From Pecten maximus (lineage: Eukaryota): a stretch of DNA of 64,000 nucleotides. Both the position numbers and the translations under genes were made by a program. The notes under the pieces were generated by a model. That model did not search any database, was not told where the DNA came from, and saw only the letters and a program-made list of their open reading frames with translations. Below are positions 39,404 to 46,519 of this stretch, in pieces (the first letter of the stretch is position 1; every line of letters begins with the position of its first letter). The stretch spans positions 30,132,001 to 30,196,000 of the forward strand of contig NC_047018.1 in the NCBI RefSeq assembly GCF_902652985.1. The letters are read 5' to 3'.

Positions 39404-40194
39404 ATGTGAGATTTCAAGTGACACCGTGTAGGAACTGGTCGGGGCCACTACATCAAGATATTCAGAGTACTATGTTGAGTCCACGGGGTACGGTGTAACG
39501 ATTGTCACTTCAAAAGCAATGACATAAAAATGATATAATTCAATTAAGTAAGTCAAAACTTCCACACAGTTTAATGGTTTTATTTAAAAGTTGTTTTTTT
39601 TTTTTTTTTATTTTTTTTTTTTTTTATTTTTAATTTTTGAAGACATTTTTAATACATGAATAGATAATAACCTCATGCACACATACATACCCTCAAACAT
39701 ACACACATCAGTTCCAGAATGTATGGTTTGCCATTATATATCATCATGATCAGAATAACCTCAAGATCTTTCATTGTCTTAAAAGCAACCTCATCCGCAT
39801 CATCATACTCATCATCACCATCGTAATCACATCATCATACAAGTCAACATACTCTCATCATCATAGTATCATCACCATAATCTCATCATACTCATCATAA
39901 TAATTAATCATCATTCTAATCATCTTCATAATATCATCATCATTAACTACAAAGGTAAATGCATGTACATAGGAGACCATACAAACTCCTATAAATGTGA
40001 ATGTACTCTGATAGACATACATGTACATACACATATTCAGTTTCCTGGTAGCCTGATCAATCCTATTGAGGGCTCAGTTTCTGTGTTGGTCATATCAACT
40101 CTATCCACGTCTACCGAGTCATCAGCAGGATTGACCACGCTCCACACTGATAAGTACCTCTTACACACACACACACACACACACACAATTGGAA

Positions 40195-40225
<31 letters not shown>

Positions 40226-40376
40226 GGATAGACAAAGAAGATAGACAAAGGATGGGACCATTTAATACATAAAATTAAAATAATATACCTTGAAAGGAGA
40301 TGGAAAGTAATTATTATCTGCTTATTTAATGAGTATCAGCAACACAGCACTGGAGAAAAAAAAAGAGATATGGTAA

Positions 40377-43300
40377 TTATAAGTCGGAGATTTTCCCCCA
40401 GTTTTTCCACTCTTTTTCAAACTTTTCCCTACAGGCTTCTCCTTTACTATATGCAATAAATTTTTGCGTCTCATGATATTGTTTAAGAGCACTTATCAGA
40501 CCATTGATGTTTAAAGACTTGTGAAAACATCGCATTTTATAAATATATTGTTTGATAACAAGGAGAATTTCATTGTCAACTTTACAGTTATTAGGATTTT
40601 GAGATAGTAGTCCAAAAATAAAAGATTGCTTATTGAAATTAAATGGGATAAAAAGAGCATCTAATAAAATTCTAAGACTTTCTAATAAGTTCTGAACTTC
40701 ACAACATTCCCACAAGATATGTATGATAGTTTCAATTTCAGAATTGCATAAAGTACAAAGAGGAGAAATTACTAGCTGTGATTTGAAAAGAAAAGAGTTT
40801 GTGGTTAAGATGTGATGATTAACTCTGTACTGAAACCACTGAAGTTTGGTATTTTTTGTAGCAATAAAGGGAATCTTGAATATCCTAGTCCAAGTTGTAT
40901 CATTCAAGTTAAAAACTTCATTCCACTTCTTTTTACCTGTAGGAACATTGTTATTTTTAATAAAAATATTATAGAAATCCTTTGAGCCTTTTCTGTGTTT
41001 CATGAATAATTCTATGTTCATTGGCAAACAAGGATATGGGATTTTTAATACAGGAATTTCTTTTGAAGACAAAAACTTTCTTACTGCTGACAAAAGGCTA
41101 TGATACTGAAGAAAATTAGTTTTTACTTGATATGTGCGAGTTACTTCTTGGAAAGTGTGAAAACATCCAGTATTATGATCTGATATCAAGTCATTTATCA
41201 TAATTATGTTTTTGTTATAGAAATTCTTAAAAAATACTGATTTCTGGCCAACAGTTATATCTTTATTAAACCATAGTGGTGTTTTTAGGATAGAATCTTT
41301 CATAATGCTATTTTTTTCGATTGATAGATTTAAATTGTACCAGGCTTTAAACACATCAGCCCAGAATATATTACTGCAACTTTTTGCACATTTCTGCACA
41401 TAATCATTGCCACAATTGGCTAGCAAATCAATGTTAATGTAACTTTTCAAAATAGCTTGCCACTTGGCTGTAGTTTGAAAAAGCCTTCTCACCCAAGATA
41501 ATTTTAATGAATCTATAAAAGCTTTTATATTTATCATTTTTAAACCACCATTTAGATAATCTTGAACAATAAATTCTCTTTTTACTTTATCTGTTTTGCT
41601 ATTCCACAAAAATTCAAAAAGAATGGAATTTAGTGTTGAAGTAAACTGTTCATTAGGACTAGGGAGTGAAATAAAGAGATGGTTAAATGTGAAATGAGGA
41701 GCGATTTAATAATATGGATTCTACCGATAGGGGTCAAAACTCTTCTTTTCCAGGTTTTAAGAAAAGACTTTAATTTAATTAGTTTTTTATCGAAATTCAG
41801 TTTTGGTATCTCATGTAGGTTGACATGAAATTCAATCCCCAATAGCGTAAATTTGTGTTTGCCCCATTGCAAATTAAGATCTGGTAGGAAAGTATCGTCA
41901 CTGAACTTTTTACTACCTATCCAAATTACCTGTGTTTTAGAAACATTAATTTTAAGACCAGAAATTTTAGCGTATAAATTAAGTTCATTAACTGATTCTT
42001 TAAGAGATATCTCTGAGCCGTTCAATGCCAAAGATGTATCATCTGCATATTGTGAGAGTAGGATCGGACTTCTATTGACTTCAATGCCTGTTATATTTTT
42101 ATTATGTCGTAATTTGATAGCTAATATTTCTGCACATAGGATAAAGATATACGGGGCTATCGGGTCACCCTGTCGGCATCCCCTTTTAACATTGAAGAAT
42201 GAAGACAAGTTTCCTCCCTGAATGATTGCGGCACTGACATTTTTGTGAAATACATTTATCCAATTTCGTATGTTTTCCCCAAAACCAAAAAATTTTAATA
42301 CTTTTTCAATAAACTCCCATGAGACTGAATCAAAGGCTTTTTGGAAATCTATCATAAGCAGCATCCCTGGAATATTATTATCCTCTGTATATTTCATTAA
42401 ATCATAAACTAACCGTGTATTTTCCCCAATATATCGTCCAGCGAGAAAACCTGTCTGATCCTTATCTATAATTTTGTCTAAAACTGTTTTTATTCTATGT
42501 GTAATTGTTCCAGATGCTATTTTATATATCACAGTGAGTAATGTAATTGGTCTCCAGTTTTTTATAAAATGCCTTGGTTTGTCTCCCTTTGGTATGCAAG
42601 TCACAATTCCACGACGTTGAGAAATAGATAATTCACCTTTTTTGTACCCTGAATTTATAGATCTTACCACAAAATTACCCAAATATTTCCAAAAACATTT
42701 AAAGAACTCAGCTGTAAAACCATCTATGCCAGGACTCTTGTTGTTTTTCATGCTTTTTAATGTTTTTCCTGCTTCTTCTAGAGTTATAGGACCTTCTAAC
42801 TTTTCAGCATCTTGTCTATTTAGTTTACAAACATTACAATCTTTTAACAAATCTTGCAAGTGAACATCTTCTATTTCATTTTCATCATTATAAAGATTTT
42901 CATAAAAACTGCGAACTTCATCTAAGATTTCATCTTGCTTTGTAATAACTTTTCCATCATCTAATTGCAATTTAGGAATTATTTTCGAGGTAAAATTTCT
43001 ATTTTCCAAATTAAAAAAGTAGTTAGTTGGTTTCTCACCCTCTTCAATCCATTTAGCTCTTGATCTTACTATACTGCCTTTAATTCTATGTTGTCTTATT
43101 TTTTCTAATTCTTTCTTTTTAGATTCTAATTGTGCAAAATTAATATCATCTTCTTCAAGTTTTTGAATAGCTGTTTTTAAATTATTCTCATTAAGATTTC
43201 GTTGTTTCTTGAGATAGGTTGAATAAGAAATTGTTTTGCCTCTGATGTGTGTCAATAAGGTTTCTAGAAAGAGACAATCATCAATAGTAAACTGAAGGTC

Positions 43301-44172
43301 TGCATCTGGTATGCTTGATATATTGAAAAGATTATATAAAGGCAGACAGTTTATTCTTTTAGATTCCAAAATACATTCCTTAACAAGTTTTAGATAGTTT
43401 TGATCATGTAGTAAACTGTTATTAAATTTCCAAATACCTTTACCTGTTTTGAATTCAGTAAGTTTAAGAGATATTGATGGGAAAGAGTGGTCTGATCTGT
43501 ATCCTGTTTCTATGTTTGATTTTACTGTATTTGAAAGTAGGTTTTCAGTCAGAAGAAAAAAGTCTAGACGGGCCTGTTTTTTGGGGTTACTTCTCCTCCA
43601 GGAGTACCTTTTTAAATTCTCGTGATGTTCCCTAAAAATATCAATAAGAGAGAAATTATCAATAATTTCCAAAACTTTGTCCCTAGCTTTAGGATTATTG
43701 ATATGCTTATAACTATTATCATAGTCTAAACTGGGGTCTAAGACTAGGTTAAAGTCGCCACAGATGATAACATATTTATTGTTAAAGTCTTCAACTGTCT
43801 CAGATATAAGATTATAAAATGCAGGGTTATCTTCATTTGGACCATACAAGTTAATGAGTGTTATGTTAAAATTTTCAATGCCAATTGCTAGTGCAATAAA
43901 ATTACCATTAGGTCCTCTTCTCTCTTTAAATATTTTAAATTCAAAATTATTTTTAAATAAAATGGCAACACCCCTCGAGTTGGATTTGTAAGAACTGAAA
44001 AAACACTGGTAACCCCACTGATTTCTAATGATACCTTCGTTTTCTTCAGTAAAGTGTGTATCTTGTAAACATATAATATTGCATTGCATTGATCGAAAGT
44101 AAGAAAAAATATCAGTTCGTTTAGTTTTTTCTCCAATGCCGCGACAATTTGCTGATATAATCGAAATGCTAT
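40377..44172 (-). CDS. L1 ORF2 (APE endonuclease-RT-CCHC), one frameshift near 41688; N-terminus probably supplied by splicing
   Basis: ISIISANCRGI, LQDTH, GDFN, RLDFF, SDH (APE); NWRPITLL, RQGDPIAP, QYADD (RT); CTLCNSEIETIIHILWEC; a 1-nt shift restores FNHLFISLPSP and joins the two listed ORFs. Confidence 0.9.
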
Positions 44173-45239
44173 CTACGGTATAAACACAAAGCTATCAAAT
44201 TAACTGTCCCCATCCCGAGAACAAAGAAAGAAAGAGAAAGAGACAGCGAGTAGATAGAAAGAAATAGACTGTATAAAGACATAAAATACATACGTGAGGT
44301 CAACGACCTAAAGACCACTGCCAACCTAACATACTACACACGTTTTCTTTCTGAAACAGCATCTACACCACCATATTGTTGTCAGACAAGAGTTATCTTA
44401 CCGGAAGTTGTATAATACATTTCCGGACTTGGTGTAATCCGGAAAAGAGATATCGTATGCATTTTATATAAAGTACCAATATTTAATGTGTTAACGTTGT
44501 AGGTAACCCTACAGCTGTCACTGATTATTTAACACCGTTGTACATTGTAACTTTGACAGGATTTTGCACAAGAACAATAAATACAACCCATACTGATTTT
44601 TTTCCCTTGAAAATTAGATAAAACATATACAATATAGACCTAGATGAATATAAACCAGAAAAATATATACATTGTAGCTACTCTTATGCCACAAACAACC
44701 AGTATAATGTATGTACATGTACGTAGTCAAACAGACTGGCAAGAAATTCGAGCATGTACTGAATAAATCTTATATCTAAAAACAGTGGATAAATAAAAGA
44801 GAAACATTGGTATTTGAAAGAAGTGTACAAAAAAAACAACAACAAAAAAACAAACAAAAAAACAGGGCAAGTATGTTCTGCCAGATGTTACTGATTATAT
44901 AATGGACAGACTCCAAAGAGATTAATGCACTTTTAGATGTATATTTCCACATATTGGAATGTGCGTAGAATTTTGAGTAAATAAAGGGGGAAAAAATCAC
45001 AGGCTACATATACAAAAAAGCTACATCTTACCTGGTGTTACAGAAATGTATGTCCCGTAATCACATGGAAAACACGCCACACACTAAGAAAAGACACACA
45101 TACACACGCGTACACATTATATTACCAATTAAATTCCAAACACTGTCAAAAGTTATCGGTATTAACCAGGAGGAATGAATTCCTGGCGGCACCGTGGTGC
45201 CAAAGTTCCATACCGATATATTATCCATTAAAATTAAGT

Positions 45240-46010
45240 CTACTGGAAGTTGGAATCATTCTTCAAAAAACTTTCGGTGAGCCGAGTACCCAGTGAAAGT
45301 CTCCTCTTTTTTCCATTTGATAGTATGGCAAAAAGCTTTCCGTCGATACTGAAAGAGTTTTTGACACAGGGAAGTTTGTAAGCATCCGCCAGTATCCTTT
45401 GATTGGTCCTTGTGAGATCCTCGAAAATAGTAATACCAGATTTTTTCAACTTGTACCGGGATTTTATCACTTCGTTTCGTTTGAAACGGCGCACAAATTT
45501 CACAATGATATTTCTGGGTCTGTCTTTGTTAAATTTTCCTAGTCTGTGAGCAATGTCAATGTCAGAACTGGTAAGCTGCACATCAAGTTTTTCATTCACA
45601 AACTTTACAATTTTCTTAGCACAGTCTTCAGCAGTTTCCGAGTCTGATGAGTCTTCCAGGCCATTTATTCTGAGTGAGTTTTTCCTCCCATGCTGCTCTA
45701 AATCATTACTCCTCGCCTCCATGATTTCATTCGAATTTTGCAGTTCAGCAACTTTTCCCTCAAGACTGCTAACATTCTGGCGTAAATTTTCATTTTCTGT
45801 CTCAAGATCAAAGACCCTTCCTTTCAGCTCCTCTACCAGTTGTTTGTTCTCTGCTCTGATAGCTTCCTTTAGCTTGTTGTATCTTTCCTCCATGTACTGC
45901 TTAGTAACTACATTGGACAGCATTTCAGTTATTTCCTCTAGTCTGTCATCAATGGTTTTTTCCGATCCTGACTTTGTACTTCCATTTCTATGACGATTGC
46001 CGGTAGGCAT
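45240..46010 (-). CDS. L1 ORF1 (coiled coil + RRM + CTD)
   Basis: 256 aa; heptad-rich region followed by RKNSLRINGL, DIDIAHRLG, PRNIIVKF, IFEDLT. Confidence 0.9.
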   Translation of the reverse strand: MPTGNRHRNGSTKSGSEKTIDDRLEEITEMLSNVVTKQYMEERYNKLKEAIRAENKQLVEELKGRVFDLETENENLRQNVSSLEGKVAELQNSNEIMEARSNDLEQHGRKNSLRINGLEDSSDSETAEDCAKKIVKFVNEKLDVQLTSSDIDIAHRLGKFNKDRPRNIIVKFVRRFKRNEVIKSRYKLKKSGITIFEDLTRTNQRILADAYKLPCVKNSFSIDGKLFAILSNGKKRRLSLGTRLTESFLKNDSNFQ

Positions 46011-46519
46011 ATTTACTCCTTTGTATAGTAGATAATACAGTTCATAAAGTGAATATAGTCAGTGTAGTCCAGGTAAATCTAGGTAAGTGTAGTGTTGGTT
46101 AACAGTGTTCACCAGCTGGGTGTCAATCCATTGTTCAAATTTCACATGTCCAAAATCAACATTTTTAGAAAAAAAGATCCAGAGATATTTTTACGAGGAT
46201 GGTGACGGTTCACTCGCACATTATTATGCCAAAAAAGATCATACGCAGTTTCCAATAAATCGATGAAAATAGGTTTTTTGTCAGAGCTCCAAAAAAGGTG
46301 AACTACCCAGATCTGTGTGACCTTGACCTTCTCTTAAAAGTTGTTAACGTTTAAACATATTTTATTTGTTTCAAAAGCATTTAAGGATTAGTTATTACAA
46401 CATTACTAAGGCCTTCTCCACATACATAATATATAGATTGAGATATAGCATAATGTGATCACAATGAATACCATTTTATTACGAAAATAATTCAAACAGA
46501 TATATGTCTTATCATATTA

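What the first reader, a model, noticed from the sequence alone, without database searches (positions are those of the whole stretch)
44172..45228. L1 element whose ORF2 appears to require spliceosomal introns
Seen (minus strand): the ORF2 frame contains the first APE motif (DSISIISANCRGI) upstream of the first ATG (44089) and is closed by a TAG a few codons earlier, with no ATG in between. An acceptor TTTGTGTTTATACCGTAG|AT sits exactly there (44173/44172, phase 1). Two phase-1 GTAAGAT donors restore the frame. Route (a): ATG TAT TAT ACA ACT TCC G| (44420-44402). Route (b): an ATG 11 nt after the ORF1 stop, MDNIS|GTATGG (45228-45214), then a 52-nt exon TTTTCTTAG|...CCAG| (45083-45032). Inference: the ~1-kb inter-ORF spacer is intronic and splicing controls ORF2 output. 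That is unexpected for an element copied from its own RNA with cis preference, since the introns were retained in this target-duplicated insertion.
Basis: partly seen in the sequence, partly recalled or inferred. Interest (0 to 1): 0.75.

Follow-up and report, generated by a model that had tools for sequence, protein, structure and literature searches.

The report
Scallop L1 whose ORF2 lacks ATG
A young jumping gene (L1-type LINE) in a mollusc genome has lost the start codon of its second gene, yet that gene is still kept intact by selection; it is probably translated by an unusual restart mechanism and not, as first proposed, by splicing.

Summary
On the minus strand lies a full-length L1-clade LINE with a poly(A) tail and target-site duplications (46333-39594). 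ORF1 and ORF2 are separated by a 1,066-nt spacer, and ORF2's conserved endonuclease N-terminus lies upstream of the first ATG.

This is a family trait: 7 of 8 sister copies share it, and the 8th has an insertion there. Three related families share it too. In 14 of 18 related families an ATG sits at the codon homologous to GTA 44176-44174, so the start codon was lost. No upstream coding exon is needed.

ORF2 stays under strong purifying selection in two families that lack the ATG (dN/dS 0.07).

Splicing got no direct support:
- Contigs from four runs cross all three proposed junctions unspliced.
- 0 of 81 ORF1-ORF2 pairs lack the spacer.
- Donor 45214 lies in a covarying RNA stem.
- Donor 44402 lies in a conserved ACTTCCGGT motif.
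- The "acceptor" TAG area is where a uORF stop meets the ORF2 start, as in most families. This fits termination-reinitiation.

One reader site stands out. G|GTAAG at 45032 is a strand-specific 5'-splice-site-like motif, fixed in position and present in 15 of 18 families. Its role is unexplained.

The parts
39594..46333 (-). Full-length L1-clade LINE: 5'UTR, ORF1, spacer, ORF2, 3'UTR and poly(A). It is flanked by the 10-bp target-site duplication CAACTTTTAA at 46343-46334 and 39593-39584.
   Evidence: eight sister copies align colinearly, and the copies compared have different flanks, each repeated at both ends.
45240..46010 (-). ORF1, 256 aa, with a coiled-coil N-terminal half. The stop TAG is at 45242-45240.
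   Evidence: only weak coiled-coil Pfam hits; no L1 ORF1p hit in the PDB. Homologues lie upstream of ORF2 in related families.
45155..45217 (-). Conserved three-way-junction RNA element just after the ORF1 stop. Helix 1 pairs 45217-45211 with 45161-45155; hairpin 1 is 45201-45188; hairpin 2 is 45186-45166.
   Evidence: in 8 families, 97.3% of cells pair against 22-47% when slid, and 5 pairs change on both sides. MFE -28.1 kcal/mol, z = -4.96, same structure.
45026..45035 (-).
   Evidence: G|GTAAG occurs in 15 of 18 families, 191-263 nt after the ORF1 end in the 12 families where that end could be placed. Counts are 20 sense, 4 antisense and 4.5 expected. The flanks cannot be aligned.
44400..44408 (-). 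Read on the opposite strand it resembles an ETS-type binding site (consensus recalled, not tested).
   Evidence: present in 12 of 18 families, always in this orientation, 57-444 nt upstream of ORF2. The bases after CCG|GT are not donor-like in most families.
44217..44268 (-). CT-rich (pyrimidine) tract upstream of the ORF2 start.
   Evidence: mean pyrimidine content is 71-73% at -100 to -60, against about 53% elsewhere in the spacers of 18 families.
44169..44291 (-). A 40-codon upstream ORF (ATG 44291 to TAG 44171-44169) whose stop overlaps the first codons of ORF2.
   Evidence: in 13 of 18 families a uORF of 29 codons or more ends within 12 nt of the ORF2 start, against 6.4% of control positions.
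44174..44176 (-). GTA, the codon homologous to the ORF2 ATG of related families. The in-frame stops TGA TAG lie at 44197-44192.
   Evidence: the homologous codon is ATG in 14 of 18 families, ATA in family 2, and no ATG in L050 and L062.
41630..44173 (-). ORF2, first part: APE endonuclease and reverse transcriptase. The frame is lost near 41688 through a 1-nt difference private to this copy.
   Evidence: Exo_endo_phos 1.4e-12, RVT_1 7.5e-34; human L1 ORF2p, E 6e-85; 8 of 8 sisters differ from the window at that point.
40377..41687 (-). ORF2, second part, in the shifted frame, with a zf-RVT domain.
39594..40376 (-). 3'UTR with a poly-C run, a (GT)n run, an ATGATG-type minisatellite and a terminal A-rich tail (39631-39594).

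Best explanation
This is a recently active L1-clade LINE. In its family the ORF2 start codon has decayed: the homologous codon is ATG in most relatives, ATA in the nearest family and GTA here. ORF2 is nevertheless still made.

The most likely route is translation from the unspliced bicistronic RNA by an initiation mode that does not need an AUG. A short upstream ORF (44291-44169) is translated and stops on top of the first ORF2 codons. The ribosome then restarts there (termination-reinitiation, or stop-start coupling).

Shown here:
- the ATG is lost in every sister copy that can be read at that point;
- ORF2 is under purifying selection in two families that lack the ATG;
- the uORF stop meets the ORF2 start in most families;
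- no spliced form appears in contigs or in genomic copies.

Inferred:
- the restart mechanism itself;
- how ribosomes reach the uORF across a spacer holding 23 ATGs.

The exception is G|GTAAG at 45032, a lineage-wide 5'-splice-site-like motif whose function remains open.
For: - 7 of 8 sisters read ...TGA TAG LCVYTV DSISIIS with no ATG; one of them has a change in the in-frame stop pair, and the 8th has an insertion there.
- Of 18 non-redundant families, 14 have an ATG at the homologous codon and 4 do not.
- dN/dS between the two families that lack the ATG is 0.07 over 570 codons. 3 of 9 family-1 copies keep an open frame of 1264 aa or more.
- The frame aligns with human L1 ORF2p from residue 7/8, so no N-terminal exon is missing.
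- uORFs of 29 codons or more end within 12 nt of the start in 13 of 18 families, against 6.4% at control positions. Nine families have overlapping AUGA, UAAUG or UGAUG arrangements. All four families without an ATG have long uORFs (40, 68, 67 and 103 codons).
[quoted passage not shown] - No spliced contig and no spacer-less copy, 0 of 81.
Against: - No experiment or read-level RNA data supports this. The only RNA evidence is assembled contigs of low depth that carry the flanks of particular copies, and three of the four runs are only guessed to be RNA.
- The CT-rich tract has no stop in any frame, so part of the uORF-length enrichment is a by-product. The families are related, so they are not independent trials.
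- GTA is not a near-cognate start codon.
- I found no consistent complementarity to 18S rRNA like that of viral restart signals.
- It is unexplained how ribosomes reach a uORF about 950 nt past the ORF1 stop.
- The conserved 5'ss-like motif and the pyrimidine tract followed by AG are exactly what a real intron would show.
Confidence: 0.55

Rival explanations
1. A genuine, conserved spliceosomal intron lies in the inter-ORF spacer. Its donor is G|GTAAG about 200 nt after the ORF1 stop, and its acceptor follows the pyrimidine tract some tens of nt before ORF2. Alternative splicing tunes ORF2 output, for example by shortening the spacer, while unspliced RNA remains the template that is copied. 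Splicing would not supply the ATG.
For: - The donor-like motif is present in 15 of 18 families, strand-specific (20 sense against 4 antisense and 4.5 expected) and anchored 191-263 nt after ORF1, while its distance to ORF2 varies from 422 to 1264 nt.
- Pyrimidine content is 71-73% at -100 to -60. 3'ss-like AGs occur in 11 of 18 families, at 2.7 times the density found elsewhere.
- The middle of the spacer varies in length and cannot be aligned.
Against: - No joint was seen in the contigs of four runs, and unspliced contigs cross the donor and the acceptor region.
- 0 of 81 ORF1/ORF2 pairs have a spacer under 685 nt. In human L1, spliced copies make up about 2% of full-length elements (PMC5860796, passage read).
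- G-runs sit between the pyrimidine tract and the AG in many families, which is atypical for an acceptor.
- No consistent ORF bridges the hypothetical junction.
Confidence: 0.2
2. One reading: ORF2 acquires its ATG only through splicing onto acceptor 44173/44172, by route (a) 44402>44172 or route (b) 45214>45083 plus 45032>44172.
For: - The frames work on paper.
- TAG|AT and AG|GTAAGA are conserved in family 2. There, an ATG lies exactly 52 nt before the donor, in the required phase.
Against: - The ATG is ancestral at the codon next to the proposed acceptor.
- Route (a) is closed by an in-frame TAG in family 2.
- L050 lacks any usable AG.
- Donor 45214 is inside a covarying helix.
- There is no spliced contig and no spliced retrocopy. 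With cis preference, such copies should dominate.
Confidence: 0.05
3. The G|GTAAG motif is a U1 snRNP binding site used without splicing, for example to suppress premature cleavage and polyadenylation across the long AT-rich ORF2, or to control nuclear retention. This is compatible with the best explanation for ORF2 initiation.
For: - Conservation is confined to the positions that match the 5'ss consensus.
- There is no evidence of a used acceptor or of spliced copies.
Against: This is purely inferential. It does not explain the pyrimidine tract.
Confidence: 0.15
4. Family 1 no longer translates ORF2 and is copied in trans by the many related active families. The open ORF2 frames merely reflect the youth of the copies.
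For: - Many related families in the same genome have intact ORF2 frames of 1264-1307 aa.
- Only 3 of 9 family-1 copies keep a full open frame.
Against: - dN/dS is 0.07 between families 1 and 2, both without an ATG, with synonymous sites near saturation.
- Two further families without an ATG have several intact copies each.
Confidence: 0.07
5. An internal ribosome entry site in the 3' part of the spacer (pyrimidine tract and neighbouring sequence) places ribosomes directly on a non-AUG codon.
For: - A pyrimidine tract lies at a fixed distance from the start.
- A review raises intergenic IRESs with non-AUG starts as a possibility for LINEs (PMC3894237, passages read).
Against: - No conserved structure was found there: only the window family folds better than shuffles.
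- Rfam gives nothing.
Confidence: 0.1

Closest known systems
Unconventional, AUG-independent translation of mammalian LINE-1 ORF2 (Alisch et al. 2006, as summarised in PMC4091050; passages read)
   Same: Both are bicistronic L1 RNAs whose ORF2 needs no AUG of its own. In human L1, an upstream ORF must be translated to completion. The ORF2 protein here aligns with human L1 ORF2p (E 6e-85).
   Different: In human L1 the result comes from engineered mutants and the spacer is 63 nt. Here the ATG is naturally absent in 4 of 18 families, the spacer is 0.7-1.8 kb, and a separate uORF, not ORF1, ends at the ORF2 start.
Stop-start (termination-reinitiation) coupling: SART1 LINE UAAUG (PMC3894237), calicivirus VP2 and influenza B BM2 (PMC2793014); passages read
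   Same: An upstream ORF's stop overlaps or abuts the restart codon (AUGA, UAAUG or UGAUG in nine families). Non-AUG restart is tolerated in the viral systems.
   Different: The upstream ORF here is a 29-103-codon uORF inside the spacer. No consistent 18S rRNA complementarity was found. Nothing has been tested experimentally.
Splicing of human L1 RNA and spliced integrated retrotransposed elements (SpIREs; PMC5860796, abstract and passages read)
   Same: Splice-donor-like sequences lie inside an L1.
   Different: Human sites are adventitious and the spliced copies are dead ends, about 2% of full-length elements. Here one donor-like motif is conserved across families and no spliced copy was found (0 of 81).
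Retroelements that keep an intron and need splicing for a full reading frame (Ogre LTR retrotransposons; Penelope-like elements). Recalled; only a search listing was seen.
   Different: No spliced RNA, no frame restoration conserved across relatives, and an ancestral ATG right at the ORF2 start.

Membership tests
L1-clade non-LTR retrotransposon | ORF2 with an N-terminal APE-type endonuclease followed by a reverse transcriptase | tested here: met
   Pfam Exo_endo_phos 1.4e-12 and RVT_1 7.5e-34.
L1-clade non-LTR retrotransposon | ORF2 closest to L1 ORF2p and not to other LINE clades | tested here: met
   Human L1 ORF2p E 6e-85 over residues 3-829. R2 proteins reach E 8e-22 and cover only the RT region. 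No clade phylogeny was built, so L1 versus Tx1 is not resolved.
L1-clade non-LTR retrotransposon | Poly(A) tail and variable target-site duplications | tested here: met
   The copies compared have A-rich tails and flanks of their own that are repeated at both ends. The window TSD is 10 bp.
L1-clade non-LTR retrotransposon | ORF1p of the coiled-coil/RRM/CTD type | tested here: inconclusive
   Only weak coiled-coil Pfam hits, below their cut-offs. No L1 ORF1p hit among solved structures. No fold was predicted.
Retroelement whose ORF requires splicing | Spliced transcripts joining the proposed sites | tested here: inconclusive
   No such joint in 4 runs, and unspliced contigs cross all sites. These are contigs, not reads, and 3 of the runs are only guessed to be RNA.
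Retroelement whose ORF requires splicing | Splice sites and restored frame conserved in relatives that also lack the ATG | tested here: not met
   Only donor 45032 is conserved. Route (a) is closed in family 2. L050 has no AG. Donor 45214 is in an RNA helix.
Retroelement whose ORF requires splicing | No conventional start at the ORF in related elements | tested here: not met
   14 of 18 families in this genome and 36 of 43 distant relatives have a Met just before the endonuclease motif.
Termination-reinitiation (stop-start) translation | The stop of a translated upstream ORF lies within a few nt of the restart codon | tested here: met
   16 of 18 families have a uORF of 10 codons or more, and 13 of 18 one of 29 or more, ending within 12 nt. 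Controls give 19% and 6.4%.
Termination-reinitiation (stop-start) translation | An upstream RNA signal complementary to 18S rRNA | tested here: not met
   Duplex scans of -80 to -15 against this genome's 18S rRNA gave no shared target site. This was a crude test; helix 26 was not mapped.
Termination-reinitiation (stop-start) translation | Downstream ORF expression depends on translation and termination of the upstream ORF | not testable with these tools
   Needs reporter assays or ribosome profiling.

The most novel reading that the evidence does not exclude
A whole lineage of active mollusc L1 elements carries a functional, selectively maintained spliceosomal 5' splice site, and perhaps a complete intron, in a modular 0.7-1.8 kb inter-ORF spacer. 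These LINEs would then use the host splicing machinery (alternative splicing or U1 binding) to control ORF2 expression while still being copied from unspliced RNA, which is a retrovirus-like division of labour not described for L1. Alongside this, ORF2 is initiated without an AUG in several natural families.
Probability: 0.22. Interest if true: 0.8.

Novelty: new variant of a known kind. Interest (0 to 1): 0.45.

Why it matters
AUG-independent translation of L1 ORF2 is known mainly from engineered human elements. Here, four natural and apparently active L1 families have lost the ATG while ORF2 stays under strong purifying selection. That would make the phenomenon ancient and general.

The long spacer also offers discrete conserved handles for dissecting how ORF2 is reached:
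- a covarying three-way-junction RNA;
- a 5'ss-like motif;
- an ACTTCCGGT motif;
- a pyrimidine tract;
- a uORF that stops on the ORF2 start.

There is a practical consequence. Annotation that insists on an ATG would start this ORF2 at Met29 and cut off invariant endonuclease residues.

The splicing idea is not supported as stated. The conserved donor-like motif is still worth a direct RNA test.

Tried and rejected
- **Long-range pairing between the G|GTAAG and ACTTCCGG motifs (a shunt-like structure).** Duplex energies were no better than for control windows in most of the 10 families tested: the fraction of controls at least as stable was 0.04-0.77, and at or below 0.13 in only 3.
- **18S rRNA complementarity upstream of the restart site.** No shared target site in 18 families.
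- **A bridging ORF running from the post-ORF1 region across a hypothetical junction to the ORF2 start.** 4 of 14 families have no ATG-ORF reaching the donor, and the rest are inconsistent.
- **A conserved hairpin made by the CT tract and the following G-run.** Only the window family folds clearly better than shuffles (z -3.8); 16 of the other 17 lie between -0.9 and +1.9, and L050 reaches -2.7.
- **Rfam on 44100-46400.** No match at E up to 1.
- **Protein database search.** 826 relatives were found, but they are ORF calls on contigs. They cannot show spliced models, and the best reaches only 63% identity.
- **Metagenome relatives.** Of 80 loci, 43 could be read at the ORF2 start, and 36 of these have a Met there. 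GGTAAG lies 150-300 nt after ORF1 in 1 of the 11 loci where ORF1's end was placed, and ACTTCCGG in 0 of 43. Both motifs are therefore specific to this genome's lineage.
- **Earlier notes of this scan.** One unchecked note makes the same kind of claim for another L1 family, and another notes a long spacer. Neither has a follow-up.
- **Literature.** Searches for L1 or non-LTR elements with an inter-ORF or spliceosomal intron listed nothing of that kind among the 20 best of 461 and of 446 papers. That is no proof of absence. Supplementary files were not consulted.
- **Left out.** I did not search any collection with a joined (spliced) sequence. Spliced copies were sought exon by exon, through the coordinates of ORF1-end and ORF2-start matches.
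Full report
**What is there.** On the minus strand lies a 6.74-kb LINE (46333-39594). It is bounded by a 10-bp target-site duplication (46343-46334 and 39593-39584) and ends in an A-rich tail. Its layout is:
- 5'UTR of about 320 nt;
- ORF1, 256 aa, 46010-45240;
- a 1,066-nt spacer;
- ORF2;
- a 3'UTR of about 780 nt.

ORF2 has APE endonuclease, RT and zf-RVT domains. Residues 3-829 align with residues 7/8-820 of human L1 ORF2p (E 6e-85), so it belongs to the L1 clade. Eight sister copies in the same genome are 97.4-99.7% identical and colinear through the spacer, apart from nested insertions, one internal deletion and 5' truncations. The copies compared have flanks of their own that are repeated at both ends.

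The window copy has a private 1-nt difference near 41688 that shifts the ORF2 frame; 8 of 8 sisters differ from it there. Of the nine copies, 3 keep an open ORF2 frame of 1264 aa or more.

**The observation.** The ORF2 frame is closed by TGA TAG (44197-44192). Six codons later comes the conserved endonuclease start DSISIISANCRGI, and the first ATG is at 44089. Beginning at that ATG would remove six residues invariant in 10 aligned relatives. The feature is not damage to this copy. Seven of 8 sisters have the same ATG-less stretch ahead of DSISIIS, one of them with a change in the in-frame stop pair; the eighth has an insertion of about 350 bp exactly there.

**Relatives show a lost start codon, not a missing exon.** I read the ORF2 start and up to 1.3 kb upstream in 18 non-redundant related families of this genome. 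Their ORF2 N-termini are 57-73% identical to the window's.
- Fourteen families have an ATG at the codon homologous to GTA 44176-44174.
- Four do not: the window family (GTA), its nearest relative family 2 (ATA), L050 and L062.
- Among more distant relatives on metagenome contigs, 36 of the 43 that could be read have a Met there.

ORF2 of families 1 and 2, both without an ATG, differs at 71% of synonymous but only 14% of non-synonymous sites (dN/dS 0.07 over 570 codons). The protein has therefore remained under selection. Since human ORF2p has only a handful of residues before the aligned point, all that is missing is an initiation codon.

**Tests of splicing.**
1. *RNA.* Of 24 runs listed, one is on record as RNA and the others are guesses. 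I laid four runs from four studies on 43600-46400.
   - No joint appears at 44402>44172, 45032>44172 or 45214>45083.
   - Contigs cross each site unspliced: X1 record 1 (43600-44376), X1 record 3 (44867-46329), X3 records 10, 13 and 14, and X4 record 20.
   - The loose ends equal the flanks or nested insertions of particular sister copies. These contigs therefore come from specific loci (read-through transcripts or DNA), not clearly from L1-driven mRNA.
   - Contigs drop rare forms, so this is absence of support, not proof of absence.
2. *Spliced retrocopies.* I paired the coordinates of 150 ORF2-N-terminus matches with 118 ORF1-C-terminus matches, which gave 81 pairs. Spacers range from 685 to 1788 nt, or longer where there are insertions, and none is shorter. 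If ORF2p came from spliced RNA and acted in cis, spacer-less copies should be common.
   - Donor 45214|45213 lies in helix 1 of a three-way-junction RNA element (45217-45155). This element is supported by covariation in 8 families (97.3% of cells paired against 22-47% when slid; 5 pairs with double changes) and by folding (z = -4.96). That explains why TCGGTA is conserved.
   - Donor 44402|44401 lies in an ACTTCCGGT motif present in 12 of 18 families, always in this orientation. The bases after GT are not donor-like in most families. In family 2 the route (a) frame carries a TAG and no ATG.
   - The "acceptor" TAG conserved in family 2 is the stop codon of a 68-codon uORF there.
   - L050 has no AG between its in-frame stop and the conserved motif.

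**What probably happens instead.** In 13 of 18 families a uORF of 29 codons or more ends within 12 nt of the ORF2 start codon or its homologue. At control positions in the same spacers the figure is 6.4%. For uORFs of 10 codons or more it is 16 of 18 against 19%. Nine families show the classical overlaps AUGA, UAAUG or UGAUG. In the window the uORF runs from ATG 44291 to TAG 44171-44169.

This geometry fits termination-reinitiation. Published work says that human L1 ORF2 translation is independent of its AUG and needs completion of an upstream ORF (PMC4091050, passages). It also says that restart can use non-AUG codons (PMC2793014, passages).

Caveats:
- The CT-rich tract has no stops in any frame, which inflates uORF length.
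- The families are related.
- GTA is not a near-cognate codon.
- I found no rRNA complementarity.
- With 23 ATGs in the spacer, how ribosomes reach the uORF is unknown.

G|GTAAG at 45032 is not a chance site.
- An exact G|GTAAG occurs in 15 of 18 families, and two more have AG|GTAAA.
- It lies 191-263 nt after the ORF1 end in the 12 families where that end could be placed, while its distance to ORF2 varies from 422 to 1264 nt.
- It is strand-specific: 20 sense, 4 antisense, 4.5 expected in 23,355 nt.
- Its flanks cannot be aligned.
- A pyrimidine tract (71-73% at -100 to -60) followed by an AG is present in 11 of 18 families.

This looks like an intron, or at least like a U1-binding site, and it occurs equally in families that have a normal ATG. 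If there is splicing, it does not serve to supply the start codon. The motifs are absent from distant relatives.

**Verdict.** The conserved donor-like motif keeps a regulatory-intron reading alive at roughly one chance in five.

The same kind of claim was noted, unchecked, for another L1 family of this genome by this scan (s1-792008). My cross-family comparison suggests that its "donor" may be the ACTTCCGGT motif, but I did not examine that locus.

Noticed in passing
window 45155-45217 (minus): A conserved three-way-junction RNA element lies 25-90 nt after the ORF1 stop, with compensatory changes across 8 L1 families and a single-stranded TGGAC-like motif. Rfam has no match. Its function is unknown; candidates are a protein-binding, packaging or translation signal.
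   Followed up: partly
window 44400-44408 (minus) and the spacers of L014, L027, L049, L050, L053, L055, L056, L060, L062, L064, L065: ACTTCCGGT lies in one orientation only, 57-444 nt upstream of ORF2, in 12 of 18 families. On the other strand it resembles an ETS-type site (recalled consensus). It could mark an internal or antisense promoter. It is absent from the 5'UTR of this element.
   Followed up: partly
sister copies L035, L036, L037, L038, at window-equivalent 44632-44637, 44371-44376, 44040-44043 and 44169-44172: Three of four nested insertions in sister copies fall within the 1.07-kb spacer (16% of the element). One is about 3 kb, with terminal inverted repeats and a 6-bp duplication, so it looks like a DNA transposon. 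One, of about 350 bp, sits exactly at the ORF2 start.
   Followed up: no
window 46318-46333 (minus): All full-length copies begin with GGTCAAGGTCACACAG after 0-5 variable bases. GGTCACAC resembles an insect core-promoter motif (recalled, not tested).
   Followed up: no
window 39750-40260 (minus): The 3'UTR holds a poly-C run of about 30 nt, a (GT)n run and an ATGATG-type minisatellite. One sister copy (L033/L047) lacks 40222-39693.
   Followed up: no
L059 and L064, about -75 to -57 from the ORF2 start: In two families a second G|GTAAG lies 18-20 nt after a strong AG that follows the pyrimidine tract, an arrangement like a mini-exon.
   Followed up: no
G000 genome-wide: There are at least 1,145 first-look candidates for this ORF2 N-terminus. 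Dozens of copies in many families at 57-73% identity have open frames of 1264-1307 aa. This is a very diverse L1 lineage that appears to be currently active.
   Followed up: partly
window, whole: The window contains 262 N. I did not locate them or try to fill them.
   Followed up: no
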